This document shows positions 13,298 to 28,915 of a stretch of 64,000 nucleotides of DNA, piece after piece (position 1 is the stretch's first letter; each line of letters opens with the position of its first letter). This stretch comes from Malacoraja senta. Lineage: Eukaryota. The stretch covers positions 14,880,001 through 14,944,000 of the forward strand of contig CM075989.1 in assembly GCA_038087875.1 (NCBI GenBank), read 5' to 3'. The notes beneath the pieces were generated by a model that had not been told where the DNA came from, did not search any database, and saw nothing but the letters and a program-made list of their open reading frames with translations. The position numbers and the translations under genes are program-made.

Positions 13298-16200
13298 AAG
13301 ATGACACTAATTGGTGTTATCTACAGACCCCCAAATAGTAGCCCGGATGTAGAGTGTAAGTTGCAGCAGGAGTTACAACTGGCATGTAACAAAGGTAATG
13401 CCACTGTGGTGATGGGGGATTTCAATATGCAGGTAGACTGGGAAAATCAGGTTGGTTCAGGACCCCAAGAAAGAGAGTTTGTAGAATGCCTCCGAGATGG
13501 ATTCTTAGAGCAGCTTGTAATGGAGCCGACCAGAGAAAAGGCAATTCTGGATTTAGTGTTGTCCAATGAACCAAATTTGATAAGAGAACTCGAGGTAAAG
13601 GAACCGCTTGGAGGTAGTGATCATAATATGATTAGTTTTAATCTGCAATGTGAGAAGGAGAAGGTTAAATCGGAAGTGTCAGTGATGCAGTTGAACAAAG
13701 GGGATTATGAAGGCATGAGAGAGGAGCTGGCCAAGGTAGACTGGAAAGGGATACTAGCAGGAATGACGGTGGAACAGCAATGGCAGGAATTTCTGGGCAT
13801 AATCCGGAAGACGCAGGATCATTTCATTCCAAAAAGGAAGAAAGATTCTAAGGGGAGTAGGAGGCAACCGTGGATGACAAGGGAAGTTAGGGATAAAAAT
13901 AAAACGAAAAGAAAAGATGTATAACACAGCAAAGAGTAGCCGGAAGCCAGAGGATTGGGAAACTTTCATAGGACAACAGAAGGAAACAAAACGAGCAATA
14001 CGGGCTGAAAAGATGAAGTACGAGGGGAAGCTGACCAGGAATGTAGATATGCTAGAAGGACAGTAAAAGCTTCTTTAGATATGTTAAGGGAAAAAGAATA
14101 GCAAAGTCAAATGTGGGTCCCTTGAAGGCAGACACGGGTGAAATTATTATGGGGAACAAGGAAATGGCAGAAGAGTTGAACAGGTACTTCGGATCTGTCT
14201 TCACTAAGGAAGACACAAACAATCTCCCAGAAGTACTGGAGGACAGAGGATCTAAGGGGTTCAAGGAACTGAAAGAAATTTTCATTAGGCGAGAAATAGT
14301 ATTGGGTAGGCTAATGGGACTGAAGGATGATAAATCCCCTGGGCCTGATGGACTGCATTCCAGGGTCCTCAGGGAGGTGGCTCTAGATATAGTGGACGCA
14401 TTGGTGATCATTTTCCAATGTTCAATAGATTCAGGATCAGTTCCTGTGGATTGGAGGATAGCTAATGTTATCACACTTTTCAAGAAAGGAGCGAGAGAGA
14501 AAACGGGGAACTACAGACCAGTTAGCCTGACTTTGGTGGTGGGAAAGATGCTGGAGTCAATTTATTAAAGAGGTAATAATGGGTCTTTTGTATAGCAGTA
14601 AAAGGATTTGTCCAAGTCAGCATGGATTTATGAAAGGAAAATTATGCTTGACTAATCTTCTGGAATTTTTTGAGGATGTGACAAGTAAAATGGATGAAGG
14701 GGAGCCAGTGGATGTAGTGTATCTAGACTTTCAGAAAGCCTTTGATAAGGTCCCGCACGGGAGACTGGTGACTAAAATTAGAGCACATGGTATTGGGGGT
14801 AGGGTGTTGATGTGGATAGAAAATTGGTTGACAGACAGGAAGCAAAGAGTAGGAGTGAACGGGTCCTTTAATGAATGGCAGGCAGTGGCGGGTGGAGTGC
14901 CGCAAGGATCGGTGTTGGGGCCGCAACTGTTTACCATATATATTAATGATTTGGAAGAGAGGATTAGGAGCAACACTAGCGAGTTTGCAGATGACACAAA
15001 GCTGGGTGGCAGTGTGAACTGTGAGAGGATGTTAGGAGGTTGCAGGGTGACCTGGACAGGTTGAGTGAGTGGGCAGATGCGTGGCAGATGCAGTATAACA
15101 TAGCTAAATGTGAGGTTATCCACTTTGGTGGCAAAAACAAGGGGGCAGATTATTATCTCAATGGGGTTAGGTTAGGTAAGGGGGAGGTACCGTGAGACCT
15201 GGGTGTCCTTGTACACCGGTCACTGAAAGTTGGCGTGCAGGTACAGCTGGTAGTGAAGAAAGCTAATGGAATGTTGGCTTTCATAACAAGAGGATTTCAG
15301 TTTAGGAGTAGAGAGGTTCTTCTGCAATCGTATAGGGCTCTAGTAAGACCACATCTGGAATATTGCGTACAGTTTTGGTCTCCTAATTTGAGGAAGGACA
15401 TCCTTGTGATTGAGGCAGTGCAGCATAGGTTCACAAGATTGATCCCTGGGATGACGGGACTGTCATATGAGGAAAGATTGAAAAGACTAGACTTGTATTC
15501 ACTGGAGTTTAGAAGGATGAGGGGCTATCTTATAGAACATATAAATTTATAAAAGGACTGGACATAGAAAACATAGAAAATAGGTGCAGGAGTAGGCCAT
15601 TCGGCCCTTCGAGCCTGCACCGCGAGCCTGCACCTGGACAAGCTAGATGCAGGAAAAATGTTCCCAATGTTGGGCGAGTCCAGAACCAGGAGCCACAGTC
15701 TTAGAATAAAGGGGAGGTCATTTAAGACTGAGGTGAGAAAAAACGTTTTCACCCAGAGAGTTGTGAATTTGTGGAATTCCCTGCCACAGAGGGCAGTGGA
15801 GGCCAAATCACTGGATGGATTTAAGAGAGAGTTAGATAGAGCTCTAGGGGCTAGAGAAATCAAGGGATATGGGGAGAAGGCAGGCACGGGTTATTGATTG
15901 GGGACGATGGTGGCGCTGGCTCGAAGGGCCGAATGGCCTCCTCCTGCACCTATTTTTTATGTTCTATGTTTCTATGTAAACATCATGGAGCAAGGAGGAG
16001 ACAGTGGCAAGGGAATGGGAAAAGTATCAGAGAACAAGGCTAATGGCTTCAATCTTCCCAGCGTTTAGTGACAGTAAATTACGGAGTATTTCCTGATAGT
16101 CTAGAGGTGGAGGGGGCTCAGTAGAAATGGTGAGTTAGCAGATACATAAAGAAACTGATGACGGTGTTGTTTCAGGTGGTGCTGCTGAGGGATGGGTCCG

Positions 16201-18480: not shown

Positions 18481-21371
18481 TTAGTGATAGTGGAACATAG
18501 ATATATTTACGAGAGGCACTCCTCTCCGGACTATGAATCAAAAGGATGGAAATGCAAATATAGAACTGGCAGTAGTGGGTTAGCAGGAAGAGAAATAGAG
18601 CATCACATATTGGAAGGTCTCATAACTTTGCCCATGGTGTTAGCCCCAGTTATATACATGGAGGTGTTCCTGGTCTAGCTATTAAAAAAGTAAATTATTA
18701 GTAAATTTAAAAGCAAGAAGCAATCTGAAGTTGCTGGAGATCAGGCAGTATCTGCAAAGTAGGAAAACATTAATGCTGATAACCTGAAACATTAATTGTG
18801 ACCTTTCAAAACTCGTGGAAGATCATCTTGTTGATGCATTAACTGTTTGCACCTCCTCAAGTGCTGCCTGACATGATTAGTATCCCCAGCATTTCCAGTT
18901 ATTTGCTGACAAGTATAAGGTTTCACTCTCCACAGCCAACAAAAATAGTGTAAGCATGCCCGAGGCAGAAGATTAAAAATGAATGAAGGCAATTTGCCAA
19001 AAAGATTGGTTCAGCTTTTGTGAATGAATTAGTGTTCAAGCCATAGAAACAGGGCACACCAGAAAGATTTTGTGCATATGTGATTGCAAGAAGCAGTGAC
19101 GGCCACTAATATTTTCATTTCTTTATATCTTGCGTAAAGGTCCAGGTCCAAAACGAAACTGATTTGGCTGTTGCTCATTTCAAGTACCTGTTCAGGTCCT
19201 TTCACAGACTCAACCCTTCAATGAGTACTGAGTGTGTATACCATGCATATGGTTTCATTCAAGTGATGCCCAGGCAAAGTGCATCCAGGAACCAAAGCCA
19301 ATCTAGTCCTAGAAAGACTGTGCCTTTTGTGAGATTCATTCACTTTAACCACAGTCAAAAACCTCAGGCTCCATTTCTGAGCATCTTCTGGAAAGGATTT
19401 TGCACTCTGTTACTCCAGCTTTACAGAACTTCATTTCAGAGATGTCTTCAGTTACCTCAACTGTTTCACAACTATCTGATCACTGTCTAGACTAGAACAT
19501 AATCCTTATATCGAGAGGAACAGTTTCCTCAGCTGTCTTCAGCTGTCCACTTGCACAGAGTGAAGGACCTTGATGAATAGGTAAACTAGCACCTTAGTTA
19601 CTCACGCATACATTGTCTCAAAGCAGGTTTTAAATAGCTGCATGATGCTATTATATCGGCCTGAATTTTGCAACACCATTTTCAGTGCTCGCCATTACCA
19701 ACAGACAATAGACCAAACAGTCTGGCATCATGTGCACTGGGAAACTATGGATAGCCTACACAGGAATAAATACTCCGATATCGCTCCCCCTACACCACGT
19801 ATCCACAGGAAACAGTGGATACCTTGCTCTTCCCAGCCTAGAGAACCCAAAGCGTGCGAAATTGGAAATTTACACAATAGAAGCTTAATAAACATGAAAG
19901 AAAACAACAGCCCACTCACATGCAAGTGAATTTTGAATGATGTTGTCTCATTTATGGTCAAATCATTCTCAAGGCCCTGAAAGGTGACTATCACAAGTGT
20001 GGTTATCTGTTATTGGAGATTATTCTGCCATAACCTATCATTCGTTCTATCATTTTGTGTTCTGTATGTGATCGAGGTCGATGTTGAGATGTTTAACCAA
20101 GGCTCTTCTACAAAATGAGTAGTTAAAGAGATGGGCTGTTGCTTGGACTGACCAGGGAGACAATAGATCCTCCTTCCAACATGATGAGGAAAAAGATTTA
20201 TAATAAATGAAAGCCTGTCAATAAGTGTAATGAACTCTAAGTACAATTCATTTGCTGCTGAATGCATGCATTCATTCATTTATAGAGTAATATCCATTAA
20301 ACCAATACGGTGTGATTTTAGCTTAGAGTGGAATTATATTAGGGAATCTGGTTATCTTTAAAAAAAAAGATTAGAATGCACTCAGATGGGAGAAAGAATT
20401 GTTGAATGATGTGGAACTCAGCAAGAAGCCCTGTGTCAGGGAAGGTCAGAAGTACAGATTCTGAGCTTCTTAGACCACCCAGTGAAATTGCTAAGTATGT
20501 TAATGGAACATAATAAACTGCAACTTAATGTGAAAGTTAAGTCCAAGCTGATAAGAACCCATAGGTTTACATTTAACTGAAATGGACAATTAAAAAAAAT
20601 CACTTAGGCAGACCTTCCAACTTATTGAAAGGGACTCCCAATCATAGTTTGATGTAATGGACAATGCAAACCCTCAGTCCATTTCTTTACATTCATTTAC
20701 AACCTCACTGAGCTTAAGGGACCCACATCACTCCTGACTACAACCTTCTTTCTAATACAAATGATGCAGGTTGTTTTTATTTTGATACGTCTTATATGAG
20801 TGCTTATACAAACCCTTATGGTACTTCCTACTTTCTGTTTTGCATCTGCGAAGTCATACTTTTCATGTTGAATTTATGCTTTCAGTTCATTTGACCATCA
20901 AAGTCCATGTGTTTATAGTAAGATTACTTATTTGGGTCACACAAACTAACCTGCCCTGCTTCTGAAACATTTCATTCACACATCTTATTTATATTTTCTG
21001 GTTTAATCATTTCTCGTCGTTCAACTTTCCCTTTACCTGCGGCACACTCTCTTTTCTCTCTCCCTGTGTTTATTTTGGAACTATTATTATTATTCCACCT
21101 TGTTGGCTTTGCGAGTTTAAAGTTCATCCATTTTGCCAGGCGGAGCCTGTCCCGAGGACAAAATTCCGGACTGTTCCAGAACTTCCAACTGGGAAAAACA
21201 GGCAGTAGTATTTTGTTTTTAAATATATATTTTTTAAAACACTCATCTGGAGATACAGACACAAGCAGAACGAATCACATCCAAAAGGAGTTTAAATATC
21301 TTTAAGGAATTATCATGAAGATGTTTCCCCCATTCATTAAATGTGCCACGATAATGCATTTTATGGAAAAC

Positions 21372-21377
21372 TTTATT
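21372..21377 (-). terminator. Candidate distal polyadenylation signal AATAAA of PRTG
   Basis: tttatt on plus, at the distal end of the miRNA-site-rich block, with TGTA elements upstream on the minus strand. Confidence 0.55.
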
Positions 21378-22105
21378 TAAACTGTGCAATCATTCAAAAT
21401 GCAGACTATTTTACAACAGTTTTAAAACATTTTGGCTTTTTAGACTAGTTATATTTTTGGCATGAGTCAGCAAAATTACAGATCAGGCACCTGAGCTCTC
21501 GGCAGCATTCACTGCAATGCTGTTATAACATAGGAACACACAGTTTCTCAGTAAAAGTAGTTAAAGACATAAATGAGGTACATTCACAAATCAAGGCAAG
21601 CGTTTATACTCCTGCAGCACTGGACAGAAAGTGAAGCTGATCCCCTGAGACAAATAAAATTTGATATAATGCAGATTCACTGTCCAGAGCCGGGATCACA
21701 AACACTGCCTTTACAAGATCATTGGCAATTGAAGATAGAAGGCTCAGAACACCTGAGATATATTGGACTGCACCCTCCACTTCTTCCCTTTAGTTCACAT
21801 CTTATCAATATGCTCTAAATCAAAAAAAAACTAACACATTAATCATTCTCATCACAAATGAATAAAACACAGTAACCAAATAAAAGCAGTTTACAATGAC
21901 TTTTCTCCCACCCTTCCTAACTGTTATAATGAGTGGTCACGTGACATACTTCAGTACCTCCAAGGTGCAAGCAGCAAATGTCACGTAGATACCCGTTACT
22001 CCAGCAACACAAATTTTAAACATAATTAAAATGAAAATACAATTTCAGACAGTTTAACACATAATTCCAGATTAATGTGCATCAACAAATACTTAACTTA
22101 AAAAC

Positions 22106-22123
22106 GAGGTAGTAGTTTTAGTT
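22106..22123 (-). promoter_or_regulatory. Extended let-7 (let-7g/i-type) target site, also a miR-196 seed match
   Basis: Plus GAGGTAGTAGTTT equals let-7g/i nt 2-14 and is followed by TAGTT. Confidence 0.65.
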
Positions 22124-23251
22124 ATATTTCAATTAACATCTCCAATCTCAAAACCGCCATCAATTGGCCAGCATATTTTCCAGACTTTGCCTTTACTGGT
22201 CTTAAAAGGCACTCTACCATTCAAAACTGTGCTTACATTTCCAAATACATTGATGTTATCAGGCACCAATAATAATCAGGCCCTCCTAATAAATTTAAAA
22301 TGTAGTCACTTTAATTAATGTAATTACAAAATTTGATTTGCTGGAAATCAATGACGAGTTTCCTTAGCAACAGCAAGTGAGGTCCTTCATAAATATCTTG
22401 CTGTACTCTCTAATGATGTAGTGTAAACACCAGTTTCAACCTACATCATATCTGAAGCAGAATTGAAAAGCGTGGAAAAAATGCTGGTGAATCTACAACA
22501 GTTCCCATGCTTGAAGTACTGTACATTACATGGCAGAAGGTATTTTATAAAGATATATTTTCACTGTTTTTTGTTGCAGGGTACTACGGAAGTGACGATG
22601 ATATCAAACAGATTTTAAATATCTGGATTTCCATTATTCACCTGATTCATGTCCTGGACGGGGAATGTGTCTTAGCCAGCTAGTACACAAAGCTGGACAG
22701 TTACAAGGTGAACAGGGGATGGGGTGGTGTTCAATATTTTACAGTTGCCTTTGTCAAAGGAAAATTTAAATGATTACTGATGCTCCCCGCAGCACAAGGT
22801 GGAACATGTGCTCTAAGTGGGTGCAACTCTGTAAAATTTGGCTTTATGAACACACATTTTCAAACTTTTCAATAGCTCAAATTGAACACCAGACTGCCCA
22901 GAGTAGGAAGATGAACAGTAAGAGAGTAACAGTTGCACAAGTGTCACCATAATTGAACCTCAGCAACTGCTACCTCAATACTGTGGGAATGAGGAGATAG
23001 GACAATAAACAGCGTTTTAAACACACAATAAGAAAAGTCCATAATGATTACTATTCTATGACATGGTGTACAGTATTTCAAAATGACTGCTGTCTAGCAG
23101 TAAGATGCCAATTTTGATTTGGAATGTTAACCATCATCATTTGTTGCTGCATCAAAATAAGCAAGTCATTAAAACAACATTTAAAAGACACATTCCAGGA
23201 GCGAAGAACTAAACTCCTGTTGTTGATACACAAAGGTGAACAAAAAATAAA

Positions 23252-23290
23252 TCTTTGGTTTTCACGGACGGCTGATCTAGCTGTATTTGA
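23252..23290 (-). promoter_or_regulatory. Bipartite extended miR-9-5p target site
   Basis: Plus strand reads TCTTTGGTT-[14 nt]-ATCTAGCTGTAT-ttga; miR-9-5p is UCUUUGGUUAUCUAGCUGUAUGA. Confidence 0.8.
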
Positions 23291-25481
23291 AAACAAAATA
23301 TTAATACTGAATTTATTGGTTTTTAAAAATCTTTAGTTGTGCTCCTCTGCTCCCTGAAATTTGTCAAGGCATGAGACTGAACACTTTTATTGCTCAATAT
23401 TGATTACATAATTTAAAGCTATTACAAGTCCCTTTTCCCCCCACATACTCCAGAGCTGTTGTGGCGTTTGATTTACTTGTTAGGAAAGTAATGCAAACCA
23501 TGTAACTGTGAGCCACAAAAATATGCAGTTTTCTTTGGAGAAGGGCTCAGGCAATCACGTGATAGCAATTCAACTGAATTCTTAAAGGGAACGCACAGGC
23601 AACTGGAGTATTTTACTTATGTTTGTGTAGAAAAATCTGATATTTCAAAAATATTAGAATTTATTTTCATCACGAAAAGATGTCATTTGCCCATTTAAAA
23701 ATAGCAAATAACGAATGATGTTTTATGATTAGTTGGATGAAGAGAATCCTCTTATAATCAATAATATGAAACAATTATTGCAATTTGGAGAAGAATGTAC
23801 TTTTACAAAATTACATCTTGTTGCACAAGAGAATTCTCTACATTTCATTCATCGACTCTACTGCAGGTTTTATGAAAAGTGACACAGTTCAGACCTGGAA
23901 TTCAGATACTACATAGATACAGTGCCCCGTCAACATTAAATCTTTGGATATAGTTGCTTATCATTTACCTTTGTATACCGCCTTTACCAACAACACAATG
24001 GGATGACACTAATCTGAAAGACAAGTGCTAAACTGACTATAAAACTGATCTACACTATAAAGAGCAGAGTGCAGCTAACCAGAAGTCGTACTCAGTAGTT
24101 AGTATTAAGGATCTTTCATTGAGCCGATATTAGAACAGCATTCACACATTAAAATCTTTGGGATTTGGATAAGACAAAGAATTGGCTTAAGTATTTTTGG
24201 ACAATAAATCATTGTATATCTATTTACTATAATTCAATTTGTTTCCAGTTAGAGATTGGGTTTTAATAGCATTTGGACGTTATCACATCAATATAGCTCA
24301 TTCCCTAAATTAGGTTTCCAATTATTCTAGTGTAATATGGTATTAGAAAATCAATTCCAATTCGAGACACATACAAGTCACTACTTCTGATTGATTAGAA
24401 ACTATTATAAAATTAAGAAATTCAACAGTTAAATGGCCCAAAAAATCCTAGTAAAAAGTTATGTACATTTTCTTTGGTAAGCATATTTTAAAGTAGTTTT
24501 GATATATCGGCATCGCAGAGGTGTGAACATTTACTGGCACACAATTCTAGTGATCTGTTCTAACTCTTAAAAGCTACACAGTAACTATTTTAAAAGCAAT
24601 AATTCAAACAAGATACCCTGTCAGTACACCACACACTTGTGTGCAGCAGTTCAAACGTAACAAATATTTGATCCCTGAGGTTAGATAAAGAATAACACTA
24701 AAATAGGTTTTATAAAGAGGTAGTATCAAACAGGAGGTGCAAGGCTAGAGCACATGAGAGTAGCAGCTTCTATTCCCTCAACATTTTTGGTAACATGAAG
24801 CTCCATTTTGTAATGCAAGCAATTCTAAAAACAAATACAAATGGTGCTCTTTGGATTGGAACTCTGAAGGAGTTATTTCATTTAATACCGTTAAGCTGAA
24901 GTTGTTTTATAATCAGAAGGTTTATAAAAATTGTGGTGGAGATAGTTATTGAATATCCAAGCACAGTTATATTATTTAAAGTAACTCTACATCCCTTTCA
25001 ACTCGATAAAAACATTATATTCCTATTATTTTGAACATGAATTCCTTGAATAGTTTAGTTAGACTTAAAACTCTGCAGGACCTTTTTATTCCAGGACTCA
25101 ATTTAATTAAATCAATTAAGTGTGACATTACATAATTTTTCATTTTGCAGTTTGTTAAATGAAGGCATTTGATGAGTTCTGGGGGGGACTAGAGGGGTTT
25201 TATGTCAAATAGTTTAAAAAAAAAAAAACATACTGTTAATTAACTTAAAAGATGACAATGAAGAATTTATTGACATGGAACTGCCTATAATTAAATGTAT
25301 TTAGTCTACCGTGATAGGTGTGGATTTTTAGTGGAGGTTTTTTGGTTATGGCTAGCCAATACCACACACTTCAAAGCTGCAGGGAAAAAATTATAGGAGT
25401 CCGCTTACTAATTCGAACATGTCACCAAGTGGCACGGGAAATTCACTTGGAATATTTAACTTTAGATAAAGTTTAATTCAT

Positions 25482-25701
25482 AGGTAAACACAAAATCCTG
25501 GAGAAACTCAGCAGGACAGGCAGCATCTCTGGAGAGAAGGCATGTGTGACATTTTGGGTCGAGAACCCGAGTCTGAAGAAGGGTCTCCACCCGAAACGTC
25601 ACCCATTCCTTCTCTCCAGAGATGCTGCCTGTCCTGCTGAGTTACTCCAGCATTTTGTGTCTACCTTTGATTTAAAACCAGCATCTGCAGTTCCTTCCTA
25701 C
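25482..25701. mobile_element. Inverted pair of Penelope-like terminal repeats inside the PRTG 3'UTR
   Basis: ~85-nt inverted arms (25482-25568 / 25581-25666); imperfect 14-bp TSD at 25468-25481 and 25702-25715; hammerhead core at 25573-25600 on plus. Confidence 0.8.
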
Positions 25702-26973
25702 AAAGTTAACTTCATCTTTAGTTTGAACATTCTCATCAAGTTGAACTTTCCTCGGAGTCCTGCACTTACAGATAATAAACTCACTATACACTCCACAAGG
25801 TTTCCCTTTGAAAAAAGTGAACGCAGCAAACCAGAATGCTCAAGCACCATCCCACTGGATACAATTCTTGTTTGAAATGGACCAGTCACATAGTGTCCGA
25901 AGCATCTGTTAGAATGCATGAAATCAGAACTGAACCGGCGCAGCACAAGGCTGTGATAGGGGTCAACGCAGGAGGCATGTTTTCCCTAATTTCTGCATCT
26001 GCATTGTATTTTCCAGTTTCTAGAACAGGAAGCATCTAGGTAATCATTTCAGTTAACCCTGGCCTGCTTCAATTAGTCTGCTGTGCCTCCCAACAGATAG
26101 TCAATGAAACTGGATGTACTCATAGCTTTTCAGCTTCAGATTCAATGGGAATACATTCACTCTGCCTATAGCGCAGAGTTCAGATATCTTTCAAAATTAA
26201 CATTATGGACAAGCTCAATAAGAACATCAATGAAGCACAAAACTTCAACAGGCACCTCATTCAATCCAAAGCACTGCTTCTTTTCTCTAATCAAACCAGC
26301 TCTACAATTTTCCCTCAACAGCTTCATGTAAATGCACATTATAAATGTAGAAGCTGTGTAAAGTCATTTAAAATTTCATGGATTGAAATTATGAATTCAA
26401 AACCTTCCAATAACTTGACTGGATATCTTATTTTATATTAACAATATAATCAAGACAACTTCAGCTCAAAGGCACTGTGTATATGGCCCCTTTTCAGAAT
26501 CTCACTTGCTCATGTAAACAGATCTTTAGTCAAACACTCTCATGGCAACATCCTTGCAACCCCTACATCACAGCAGAACAACACCAACAAACATTTTTTA
26601 AATCAAAACAACACATCTCTGTAAGGAAGTATCAACTATTAGGTAATGGAGTCAAATCCTGTTAAATACTGGAGTTTATCATTAGGTAAAATTGAGGTAG
26701 ATTTTTTCAGCAGAAAACCTGAAACAGTATTTCTGCTCCAATGATATACCGTTCAAATTAAAATCAAAAGAAATGTAATGGTCCTTTTCACATTTTTTTG
26801 ACATAGACATTCATGGTGGGTAAAATAAAAAATATGGAACATTCATAAACCAAGTGTGTAAGAACCTGGAGTGACTAAAAAAATGACCCAGACTTTCTTT
26901 CCAGAGTGTTCTTTGGCTTACTGCACATTTGTCCATTGTACAGATAAATTATTGTGAAACTGGATCTGGTTGC

Positions 26974-27405
26974 TTAAATTGGAAATTGGTTGTTGGTGTT
27001 TTCACTTGTTGGTTTTGAAGACATGTGGCTTGGTCGAGGCAGCGCCAGTAGGTCAGAGGTAGTGGACTGAGAAACAACCAACAGACGTTGATCTTCCTCG
27101 GAGGTAGGCTGGACAGGAATGCTGGCAGTTTCCCCCTGGACAGACGATCCCAAGAAGGCAGGTGGATCACACGTGACAGAAGAAAGGTGCAGCATTTCCA
27201 TCTCCTCCCTGGAATCATGCGAATACCTGCCCGAATCTCCAGTTTCGTGGCTTCCATCACTGTTGTGAGAATATTCAGTATCTCCCATGGCGGTAAACAC
27301 AGCTGGCAATGATGTGGGGGGAATCAGTACCGAGTCTCCTGATTCCTCACGGCTCAGCCCAGTCAGCTGGTAGGGGCTCACGCCAAACTCGTTTCTTCTC
27401 ACTGG
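26974..27405 (-). CDS. PRTG: Protogenin terminal coding exon (PVRRNEFG...DTEYSHNSDGSHETGDSGRYSHDS...NNQFPI*)
   Basis: Contains the conserved SHETGDSGR(F/Y)SH motif. AG at 27406-27407, phase 0, TAA stop at 26974-26976. Confidence 0.94.
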   Translation of the reverse strand, partial: PVRRNEFGVSPYQLTGLSREESGDSVLIPPTSLPAVFTAMGDTEYSHNSDGSHETGDSGRYSHDSREEMEMLHLSSVTCDPPAFLGSSVQGETASIPVQPTSEEDQRLLVVSQSTTSDLLALPRPSHMSSKPTSENTNNQFPI

Positions 27406-28070
27406 CTGTTAACAAAAGAATGGTGATTTAGAAACAGTTTCAAATCCCAGACAATGCCCTTGGTTGGAATGAACATTTAACCTTTTTTCCCCACCCATAG
27501 AGAACTCAAAATATTCAAACTATTGTACAATAAACCAAAATACCTCCATTGGAAAACTAGGACCACACTGTTAGGCTTTATCCATAATTATTTAAAAAAA
27601 AAGACATCAGGCAGGCAGCCAATTGAATACATTTTGGCAAGTATGGGTCTAAATGAGGGAAAATAAGTGATTATGAATGGGGAGTAATTAAAGGTATTGA
27701 TGCCATCAATTGATGAGCAAGTGTGACTGACTGTGTAAAACTGCAATTGCAGGATTCATTCATCATGTTGAGTTAATCAGGTCAAGCACTTAAAGTAACC
27801 AAAAATAAAACTGATTGTAATTGACAAGTCAAATCAAGCCCAACAAATTCCAATTCTATTTCTGGCAGGAATTGCTCTCATTATATACTGTAGCAAGCAT
27901 CAGCTGATGCAAGAAATTGTCAAACAAGCCCATCGCAGTCTATGCAGCCCAACGACTAAAGTCTGAGACTACTTCCATCCTATTAAATCTCACCCCATCA
28001 ACAAATCTTACATTATCCTTCAATGCAAATGTATGATCACAACTACTTTAGCACTTGTTCCCAATCGTAC

Positions 28071-28181
28071 CTGCTCCTCCTTGAATGTATTTGTTGATCT
28101 CTTTTTTCTTCCAAACAAAAAGCATTTTTTGGACTTGTCTTTTCTGTGACCAGAGTTGCTAACGATCAGATCAGATCCACC
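28071..28181 (-). CDS. PRTG: Protogenin cytoplasmic exon (GGSDLIVSNSGHRKDKSKKCFLFGRKKRSTNTFKEEQ)
   Basis: Hand-translated; resembles GGTDLIINSYG...SKKKWFFF...VEQ. AG at 28182-28183, GTACGA donor. 111 nt, phase 0/0. Confidence 0.9.
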
Positions 28182-28459
28182 CTGTTGTAAAGAGTACATT
28201 CACCAAGGTTACTTTATGCTCACTTGCAGCCTGCTGCGCAGAATGTGCTCAAGTTGCACTTTGTGCTGTTGGCTTAGGTCACGACCAGAAATGTCTGTCC
28301 ATTCCCTCAGCAGATGCTGCCCGACCTGCTGGATTCCTCCAGTACTTTGTGTTTTCCTCCTTTCAGCTTGCTCTTAAACCAATTACTTCATTTGTTTTCC
28401 ACTGTTTAGAGGCCTGAAACTATTTTAGGCTTTAACAAGATTCCTCATCAAGAGTCAGG

Positions 28460-28915
28460 ATGTCATACAGCATGGAAACGGGTCCTTTGCCCCAATTTGT
28501 CCACCCCGACCAATGTGCCCCATCAATACTAGACCCACCTGCCTGCATTTGTCCCATATCCCTCTACCTTCTGAACCTTCTGAATGTTGTAGTCGGCAGG
28601 GCAGTACTCTGCATATCGCCAACTTGGACAATTTTACATTTTTATCAAGTCAATTAATCAAGCCAATTAACCTACAAACCTGTACGTCTTTGGAGTGTGG
28701 GAGGAAACCGAAGATCTCGGAGAAAACCCACGCAGATCACGGAGAGAACCTACAAACTCCATACAGACAGCACCCGTAGTCGGGATCGAACCCGGGCCTC
28801 TGGCGCTGCATTTTGCTGTAAGGCAGCAACTCTACCGCTGTGCCACCGTGACCACCCTCTACATTTATCCTATCCCATGTTAAATGTTTCTTAAATGTTG
28901 TGGTAGTACCTACCT
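28460..28915 (-). mobile_element. HE1-type V-SINE (~28625-28857) nested in a CR1 3' tail fragment
   Basis: Little-diverged SINE head and central domain in reverse complement, flanked by CR1 tail sequence. Confidence 0.8.

What the first reader, a model, noticed from the sequence alone, without database searches (positions are those of the whole stretch)
23252..23290. Near-complete bipartite miR-9 complementary site in the PRTG 3'UTR (TDMD-trigger or super-site candidate)
Seen: plus strand TCTTTGGTT (23252-23260, miR-9-5p nt 1-9), then 14 nt (ttcacggacggctg), then ATCTAGCTGTAT (23275-23286, nt 10-21), then ttga. The minus-strand mRNA therefore carries an 8mer seed plus 12 contiguous 3' pairs split by a 14-nt target-side bulge. 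Twenty-one matching nucleotides in order on the correct strand is very unlikely by chance. The bulge retains two CpGs in an AT-rich UTR, which hints at constraint. Known: seed plus extensive 3' pairing with a central interruption is the architecture of ZSWIM8-dependent TDMD triggers (Cyrano/miR-7, Nrep/miR-29b). PRTG marks early neural progenitors and has been reported as a miR-9 target. Inference: PRTG mRNA may not only be repressed by miR-9 but may also destabilise or titrate it, forming a double-negative developmental timing switch. The bulge is longer than in classic triggers, so it may instead be a very high-affinity 3'-supplementary site.
Basis: partly seen in the sequence, partly recalled or inferred. 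Interest (0 to 1): 0.85.

Follow-up and report, generated by a model that had tools for sequence, protein, structure and literature searches.

The report
Split miR-9 site in skate PRTG
The 3'UTR of the skate PRTG gene carries a real two-part binding site for microRNA miR-9; the second part is kept in the elephant shark but is absent from the bony vertebrates sampled, so it is a credible extra-strong miR-9 site and only a long-shot candidate for destroying miR-9.

Summary
The gene on the minus strand is PRTG, closest to Leucoraja, so the window comes from a skate. The site lies 3.7 kb into a 5.6-kb 3'UTR. RNA libraries of a related skate cover that UTR, while the upstream intron is silent.

The 8mer seed match is invariant in all seven jawed vertebrates compared: skate, elephant shark, gar, sterlet, frog, bird and rodent. 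The 12-nt block complementary to the miR-9 3' half is kept 11/12 in Callorhinchus, at the same 14-nt spacing. Five of the 14 spacer bases differ there, including both CpGs. The five bony vertebrates lack the block. Predicted 3'-pairing energy is -16.7 to -16.9 kcal/mol in the cartilaginous fishes and -3.5 to -6.6 in the others.

Best reading: a conserved miR-9 site specific to cartilaginous fishes, with extended 3' pairing across a long bridging loop, that strengthens PRTG repression. A TDMD trigger is not excluded but is less likely. The loop exceeds the 3-11 nt of validated triggers, changing loop length cut ZSWIM8 binding in vitro, and miR-9-5p is not reported as ZSWIM8-sensitive in mouse.

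The scan noted the same site on another piece of this genome (s1-172316, s1-172390). That is not independent support.

The parts
23252..23260 (-). miR-9-5p seed match AACCAAAGA: an 8mer plus a pair to nt 9
   Evidence: The core ACCAAAGA is invariant in skate, Callorhinchus, gar, sterlet, Xenopus, bird (alignment A1) and rodent; the base opposite nt 9 is T in Xenopus.
23261..23274 (-). 14-nt bridging loop (mRNA sense CAGCCGTCCGTGAA), unpaired to miR-9
   Evidence: Its length is kept but 5 of 14 bases differ in Callorhinchus, including both CpGs.
23275..23286 (-). 12-nt block ATACAGCTAGAT complementary to miR-9-5p nt 10-21
   Evidence: It is 11/12 identical in Callorhinchus, and the only change lies opposite nt 10. 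It is absent from the five bony-vertebrate orthologs. Predicted 3'-pairing energy is -16.7 kcal/mol.
23287..23293 (-). Conserved 5' flank TTTTCAA, part of an 18-nt run identical between skate and Callorhinchus
   Evidence: exact run starting at window 23293.
21350..26973 (-). PRTG 3'UTR of about 5.6 kb, from the stop codon at 26974-26976 to the conserved AATAAA at 21377-21372
   Evidence: Collinear conserved islands with Callorhinchus, gar, sterlet and bird. The poly(A) signal sits in a 21-nt run identical in Callorhinchus. RNA contigs of a related skate cover 27408 down to 21438.
26974..27405 (-). Last coding exon of PRTG (cytoplasmic tail and stop codon)
   Evidence: 94% identical to residues 1066-1207, the C-terminus, of Leucoraja protogenin P0050. 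The acceptor AG is at 27407-27406. RNA contigs stop aligning at 27408.
24471..24478 (-). Second miR-9 8mer, ACCAAAGA, without 3' pairing
   Evidence: Conserved in Callorhinchus at +2445.
23941..23947 (-). One of five further miR-9 7mer-A1 matches (CCAAAGA). The others start at 26916, 24854, 24161 and 23538.
   Evidence: Seven CCAAAGA in the UTR against 0.5 expected.

Best explanation
This is a functional two-part miR-9-5p binding site in the 3'UTR of PRTG (protogenin) of a skate. The 8mer seed match is an ancient site shared by all jawed vertebrates sampled. In cartilaginous fishes, an 11-12-nt block 14 nt upstream also pairs with miR-9 nt 10/11-21. AGO-miR-9 would dock by the seed, loop out the 14 unpaired target bases, and zip up the 3' half. 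That adds about -17 kcal/mol of predicted pairing energy, so this site should bind more tightly and for longer than the other six miR-9 seed matches in the same UTR. The expected result is an especially sensitive shut-off of PRTG as miR-9 rises in neural progenitors. Shown: the sequence, strand, gene, UTR membership, transcription in a related skate, conservation pattern and predicted energies. Inferred: that skates have the canonical miR-9-5p, that the 3' pairing forms inside Argonaute across so long a loop, and that its effect is stronger repression.
For: Sequence. PRTG identity and strand. UTR limits and collinearity. Transcription: organism A RNA contigs cover the last exon and the UTR at an even depth of about 7-9. 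The intron at 27534-27927 is at or near 0 in the three RNA runs but 11-22 in the DNA run X9. Chance of the 3' block is 6e-6 per seed site. Skate versus Callorhinchus: the 18-nt and 11-nt runs flanking the loop are identical, the spacing is identical, and the loop is changed at 5/14 against 1/21 in the paired blocks (Fisher p = 0.03). The single block change lies opposite nt 10, in the central region that Argonaute keeps unpaired. 3' pairing energy is -16.7 and -16.9 kcal/mol in the two cartilaginous fishes and -3.5 to -6.6 in bird, frog, gar and sterlet. Loops up to 15 nt between seed and supplementary pairing still gave more than 10-fold higher affinity and measurable extra repression (bioRxiv 10.1101/476960). 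A 'positive-offset' mode that includes pairing to nt 11 gives large affinity gains (PMC8940178). PRTG is a published target of miR-9, let-7 and miR-125 (PMC3848287; PMC3760135). The skate UTR holds 7 miR-9 seed matches against 0.5 expected.
Against: No binding, repression or CLIP/CLASH data exist for any cartilaginous fish. The offset of about +14 is far beyond the optimum of +2 to +4. Counted from t8 to the g13 pair, the bridge is about 18 nt, slightly above the longest loop tested (15 nt). With six other miR-9 seeds in the same UTR, the extra benefit of one stronger site is unclear. Ordinary supplementary function needs only 4-5 pairs, so keeping 11 pairs for the whole time since skates and chimaeras split hints at a function that needs the whole block. 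The neighbourhood is a conserved island in amniotes too (GTACTT..ATCAGCAAAT in bird and rodent) without miR-9 complementarity, so part of the constraint may come from another factor. Only two cartilaginous lineages were compared, because no shark sequence could be fetched.
Confidence: 0.5

Rival explanations
1. PRTG mRNA is a TDMD trigger in cartilaginous fishes. Seed plus 11-12 bp of 3' pairing pulls the miR-9 3' end out of the PAZ pocket. ZSWIM8 then ubiquitylates Argonaute and miR-9 is degraded. This would give a double-negative timer between PRTG and miR-9.
For: The site has an 8mer seed, 11-12 contiguous 3' pairs and -16.7 kcal/mol. This lies within the -9.6 to -17.1 range, and above the 6 bp or more, of validated triggers (PMC10899785). 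Conservation of the whole extended block rather than only nt 13-16 is the feature by which triggers such as Cyrano were recognised. The same review notes that triggers with longer loops would be missed by current searches. Drosophila miR-9b has an endogenous trigger, Kah (bioRxiv 10.1101/2024.12.11.627053).
Against: The loop is 14-15 target nt against 3-11 nt in validated triggers. [quoted passage not shown] The rodent ortholog lacks the block anyway. No small-RNA data were examined for tailing or trimming.
Confidence: 0.25
2. The upstream block is conserved for a reason unrelated to miR-9, such as a binding site for a protein or another RNA or a local structure, and its complementarity to the miR-9 3' half is incidental. 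Only the seed acts as a miR-9 site.
For: The whole ~90-nt neighbourhood is a conserved island. It ranks only in the top 7-12% of windows in a UTR that is 64% identical overall between skate and Callorhinchus. Bird and rodent conserve a non-complementary block at the same place, and ATCAGC is shared with the skate.
Against: An 11-12-nt exact complement to the same miRNA whose seed lies 14 nt downstream has a chance of about 1e-5. The substitutions fall in the loop and opposite nt 10, exactly where miR-9 pairing does not need them. No conserved intramolecular structure was seen: the skate hairpin of -9.6 kcal/mol is absent in Callorhinchus at -1.6. There is no Rfam match at the site.
Confidence: 0.15
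3. The 3' complementarity is neutral. It arose by chance or as a remnant, and persists only because cartilaginous fishes evolve slowly.
For: Skate and Callorhinchus UTRs align over almost their whole length, and 22 exact runs are longer than the one at the site. Closely related skates differ by only about 3%, so they say little.
Against: Substitutions are frequent in the 14-nt loop (36%) but nearly absent in the flanking 39 nt. The chance of the match itself is about 1e-5.
Confidence: 0.1

Closest known systems
Validated vertebrate TDMD triggers (Cyrano for miR-7, NREP/libra for miR-29b)
   Same: An 8mer seed, long contiguous pairing to the miRNA 3' half, an unpaired centre, predicted 3' energy in the same range, and deep conservation of the whole site.
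   Different: The loop is 14-15 nt against 3-11 nt. The host mRNA is itself a multi-site target of the same miRNA. There is no ZSWIM8, tailing or miRNA-level evidence. The block is restricted to cartilaginous fishes among the taxa sampled.
3'-supplementary and 'positive-offset' extended 3'-pairing sites (let-7 in lin-41, lsy-6 in cog-1, miR-122 test targets with 1-15-nt bridges)
   Same: A seed match plus 3' pairing that includes nt 11 and nt 13-16, joined by an unstructured target loop. In vitro, loops up to 15 nt still raise affinity and repression.
   Different: The offset of about +14 is far from the optimum of +2 to +4. Pairing is 11-12 bp rather than 4-9. No need for family-member discrimination is known for miR-9-5p.
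Published miR-9 targeting of PRTG in chick chondroblasts and mouse retinal progenitors
   Same: Same gene and same miRNA. The seed match here is orthologous to an 8mer present in bird and rodent UTRs. let-7 and miR-125 sites accompany it.
   Different: The amniote orthologs have no extended 3' complementarity (predicted 3' energy -6.6 kcal/mol in the bird ortholog; the rodent ortholog was not scored). The extended block has not been described in the papers searched.
Drosophila Kah trigger for miR-9b
   Same: An endogenous transcript proposed to control a miR-9 family member through pairing beyond the seed.
   Different: It is in an insect, in an unrelated transcript and for a different family member, and it was experimentally validated by the authors. 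There is no sequence relation to this site.

Membership tests
Canonical conserved miRNA 8mer site | Match to miRNA nt 2-8 plus A opposite nt 1, on the mRNA strand, inside the 3'UTR | tested here: met
   ACCAAAGA at 23259-23252 on the minus strand. It lies inside the UTR as defined by the stop codon, the conserved poly(A) signal and RNA contigs.
Canonical conserved miRNA 8mer site | Preferential conservation of the seed match in orthologous UTRs | tested here: met
   Invariant in 7 jawed vertebrates at collinear positions.
Canonical conserved miRNA 8mer site | The cognate miRNA exists with this sequence in the species | not tested
   No miR-9 locus lies in the window or in the fetched loci. Inferred from the invariance of miR-9-5p between insects and mammals (from memory).
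Seed plus 3'-supplementary or extended 3'-pairing site | Contiguous Watson-Crick pairing to the 3' half that includes nt 13-16 | tested here: met
   12 pairs (nt 10-21) in the skate and 11 pairs (nt 11-21) in Callorhinchus.
Seed plus 3'-supplementary or extended 3'-pairing site | A bridging loop within the range shown to work (1-15 nt) | tested here: inconclusive
   There are 14 unpaired target nt if nt 9-12 pair, but about 18 nt from t8 to the g13 pair. This is at or just above the tested limit.
Seed plus 3'-supplementary or extended 3'-pairing site | Higher affinity or repression than the seed-only site | not testable with these tools
   Needs binding or reporter assays.
TDMD trigger | Seed pairing plus at least 6 contiguous 3' pairs, with 3' energy of about -9.6 to -17.1 kcal/mol | tested here: met
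   An 8mer, 11-12 bp and -16.7/-16.9 kcal/mol, against the ranges in PMC10899785.
TDMD trigger | A short central bulge or internal loop (3-11 nt in validated triggers), whose length affects ZSWIM8 recognition | tested here: not met
   The loop is 14 nt in the skate and 15 nt in Callorhinchus, outside the validated range. Changing loop length reduced ZSWIM8 binding.
TDMD trigger | ZSWIM8-dependent loss, or tailing and trimming, of the cognate miRNA | not testable with these tools
   No data exist for cartilaginous fishes. miR-9-5p is not named as ZSWIM8-sensitive in the mouse studies read, but the rodent ortholog lacks the block.

The most novel reading that the evidence does not exclude
PRTG mRNA of cartilaginous fishes is an endogenous TDMD trigger for miR-9 with an unusually long 14-15-nt loop. 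It would be kept since skates and chimaeras split and would form a mutual-repression timer for the exit from the early neural progenitor state. This would extend the accepted architecture of triggers and give vertebrate miR-9 its first trigger.
Probability: 0.22. Interest if true: 0.8.

Novelty: new member of a known kind. Interest (0 to 1): 0.5.

Why it matters
miR-9 is a key timer of vertebrate neurogenesis, and PRTG marks the early progenitor state that miR-9 helps to end. A site that keeps 11 contiguous 3' pairs across a 14-nt loop in both a skate and a chimaera is a natural test case for two open questions. The first is how far seed and 3' pairing can be separated and still cooperate inside Argonaute. 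The second is whether long-loop sites can trigger miRNA decay. If the site only raises affinity, it is a clean, evolution-validated example of long-bridge 3' pairing. If it triggers decay, it widens the search space for TDMD triggers. It also dates the PRTG/miR-9/let-7/miR-125 circuit to the common ancestor of jawed vertebrates.

Tried and rejected
1. I tried to fetch orthologous DNA through the spurious ORF that spans the site. It gave no hits.
2. Shark and further ray UTRs could not be obtained. For Hemiscyllium the file was too large. For Rhincodon the gene range was too long. Leucoraja and Narcine proteins were not on record. A skate-related contig from SRR089296 also had no DNA.
3. A degenerate miR-9 gene on the plus strand was rejected. 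There is no 23-mer with 3 or fewer mismatches and no Rfam miRNA match at the site.
4. The loop CpGs as a sign of constraint were rejected, because both are absent in Callorhinchus.
5. A proximal poly(A) signal (AATAAA at 23317-23312) that would cut the site off is not conserved (AATGAA in Callorhinchus). A 3.2-kb RNA contig also runs through it.
6. A skate hairpin that sequesters the seed (-9.6 kcal/mol) is not conserved.
7. The exact letters of the seed in the closely related skates could not be read, because the difference tables were truncated. No difference is listed at 23269-23377 in three RNA samples. At about 3% divergence this says little either way.
8. My first guess that the bird site at +2438 was the ortholog was replaced by +2932 after flank alignment.

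Full report
**Observation.** The plus strand reads TCTTTGGTT at 23252-23260, then 14 nt (ttcacggacggctg), then ATCTAGCTGTAT at 23275-23286, then ttga.
- On the minus strand this is ATACAGCTAGAT, a 14-nt loop, then AACCAAAGA.
- Against the canonical miR-9-5p sequence (recalled from memory; identical in fly miR-9a and human) this gives an 8mer seed match, a pair to nt 9, and 12 contiguous pairs to nt 10-21.
- The window holds no contiguous miR-9-like 23-mer with 3 or fewer mismatches. Of the ten miR-9 seed matches on both strands of the window, only this one has a 3' block longer than 5 nt.

**Gene, strand and transcript.**
- The minus-strand ORF at 26974-27402 finds 'protogenin-like' of Hemiscyllium, 'protogenin A' of Chiloscyllium and 'Protogenin' of sterlet.
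- This ORF and five fibronectin-type exons upstream are 94-98% identical to Leucoraja erinacea protogenin. The ORF ends exactly at that protein's C-terminus. The window is therefore from a skate, and the stop codon is at 26974-26976.
- The last exon starts at 27405, behind an AG at 27407-27406.
- Downstream of the stop, the sequence is collinear with the PRTG 3'UTRs of Callorhinchus, gar, sterlet and a bird. The last conserved island ends at about 21360 and holds an AATAAA at 21377-21372, inside a 21-nt run identical in Callorhinchus. The UTR is thus about 5.6 kb, and the site lies 3.7 kb into it.
- In the RNA libraries of a related skate (organism A, about 3% divergent), contigs cover 27408 down to 21438 at an even depth of 7-9. 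One 3,223-nt contig runs through the site.
- The intron at 27534-27927 is at or near zero in the three RNA runs but is covered in the DNA run of another skate.
- The two contigs that reach 27408 (X1, X3) carry 30-185 further letters that do not fit the intron, as expected of spliced mRNA.

**Chance.** With flanks simulated from the UTR's own dinucleotide make-up, a 12-nt or longer contiguous complement to miR-9 nt 9-23 within 40 nt upstream of a seed occurs at 6e-6 per seed site, and 11 nt or longer at 2.3e-5. This is negligible for this UTR. It is not negligible for a search over all miRNAs and a whole genome, so conservation has to decide.

**Conservation.** I fetched six orthologous UTRs and located the orthologous site from its conserved flanks.
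- The ortholog lies at Callorhinchus +3841, gar +3183, sterlet +2178, Xenopus +3233, bird +2932 and rodent +2976.
- The 8mer is invariant in all seven species, and a GTTACC motif downstream is shared by most of them.
- The elephant shark reads ATACAGCTAGAA where the skate reads ATACAGCTAGAT, and the distance to the seed is the same.
- An 18-nt run (TTTTCAA plus 11 nt of the block) and the 11 nt AAAACCAAAGA are identical between the two, whereas 5 of the 14 loop bases differ.
- The single change inside the block lies opposite nt 10. This is in the central region that Argonaute keeps unpaired in the published structures.
- Loop against paired blocks is 5/14 versus 1/21 changed (Fisher p = 0.03).
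- The caveat is that the whole UTR is well conserved: 64% identity over aligned columns, with 22 exact runs longer than this one. The site's island ranks only in the top 7-12% of windows.
- In gar, sterlet, frog, bird and rodent the block is not complementary to miR-9.
- Bird and rodent conserve a different block, GTACTT..ATCAGCAAAT, at the same place, and it shares TAC and ATCAGC with the skate.

**Energetics.** Predicted pairing of miR-9 nt 11-23 with the sequence upstream of the seed is -16.7 kcal/mol in the skate and -16.9 in Callorhinchus. It is -6.6 in the bird, -6.1 in the frog, -3.5 in gar and -3.8 in sterlet. A skate hairpin that could hide the seed (-9.6 kcal/mol) is not conserved.

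**Context.** The skate UTR has seven CCAAAGA matches, two of them 8mers, against 0.5 expected. It also has let-7 and miR-125 matches, several of them inside runs identical in Callorhinchus. This fits the published circuit in which let-7, miR-125 and miR-9 repress Prtg in mouse retinal progenitors (PMC3760135) and miR-9 targets PRTG in chick chondroblasts (PMC3848287).

**Mechanism.** Two readings fit the anatomy.
[quoted passage not shown] Pairing that includes nt 11 with a positive offset defines a second, stronger binding mode (PMC8940178). Here the offset is about +14, well beyond the optimum of +2 to +4 and at the edge of what was tested.
- **(b) TDMD trigger.** The seed type, the 11-12 bp and the energy fall within the values of validated triggers (at least 6 bp; -9.6 to -17.1 kcal/mol; PMC10899785). 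However, their loops are 3-11 nt, and changing the CYRANO loop length substantially reduced ZSWIM8 binding and ubiquitylation (PMC13083262).
- miR-9-5p is not named among ZSWIM8-sensitive miRNAs in two mouse knockout studies. No paper in the library links PRTG with TDMD. The mouse-lineage ortholog lacks the block, so these negatives bear only weakly on skates.
- I put (a) at about 0.5 and (b) at about 0.25. The rest is shared between an unrelated conserved element and neutral persistence. Keeping all 11 pairs, when 4-5 suffice for ordinary supplementary pairing, is what keeps (b) alive.

**Novelty.** PRTG as a miR-9 target is known. The extended, long-loop, cartilaginous-fish-specific form of one of its sites is not described in anything I could find. 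I class it as a new member of a known kind, namely seed plus extended 3' pairing.

**Earlier notes.** The scan has already noted the same site and the seven seeds on another piece of this genome (s1-172316, s1-172390). I could not see that DNA. It is probably the same locus represented twice and is not independent evidence.

**Limits.**
- No shark or second ray UTR could be fetched.
- The seed letters in the close skates could not be read from the truncated tables.
- No small-RNA data were examined.
- The skate miR-9 sequence is inferred, not seen.

Noticed in passing
window 24723-24717, 26700-26693, 22112-22106 (let-7); 24679-24672, 21649-21643 (miR-125), minus strand: The PRTG 3'UTR carries let-7 (CTACCTC) and miR-125 (CTCAGGG) seed matches. 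Those at 24723, 24679 and 21649 lie inside runs identical between skate and Callorhinchus. This fits the published let-7/miR-125/miR-9 control of Prtg.
   Followed up: partly
window 25337-25730 and 28125-28912: Two very high-copy repeats, with depth in the hundreds of thousands to millions in a DNA run. One lies inside the 3'UTR and one in the last intron. The UTR copy gives a sub-threshold Rfam hit to MIR2118 (42 bits against a gathering score of 85), which is almost certainly a repeat artefact.
   Followed up: partly
window 23269-23270: In two independent RNA samples of the related skate (X3, X4), contigs start at 23269 and 23270, inside the loop of the site. In a third sample (X1) a contig runs through. 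The cause could be a polymorphism, a coverage gap or an assembly branch. Extra depth in the bin around the site was also seen.
   Followed up: no
L003:17260-17310 (bird) and L007:104200-104260 (rodent): Upstream of the orthologous 8mer, bird and rodent share a conserved block GTACTT..ATCAGCAAAT that is not complementary to miR-9. ATCAGC is also present in the skate loop. This may be a second, unidentified cis-element next to the seed.
   Followed up: partly
L002:38440-38475 (sterlet, +1806 after the stop): A different miR-9 8mer in sterlet is preceded directly by TCATCTTGCTAG. This could pair with miR-9 nt 12-16 and 20-23 with a 3-nt bulge on the miRNA side. The gar ortholog is degenerate (GCCAAAGA, block decayed).
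   Followed up: partly
window 23312-23317, minus strand: An AATAAA lies about 20 nt upstream of the site in mRNA sense and could in principle give a short isoform lacking the seed. It is AATGAA in Callorhinchus, and an RNA contig reads through it.
   Followed up: partly
window 14001-16000: Strong GC skew (+0.35) in a 2-kb stretch downstream of the PRTG 3' end. It was not examined.
   Followed up: no
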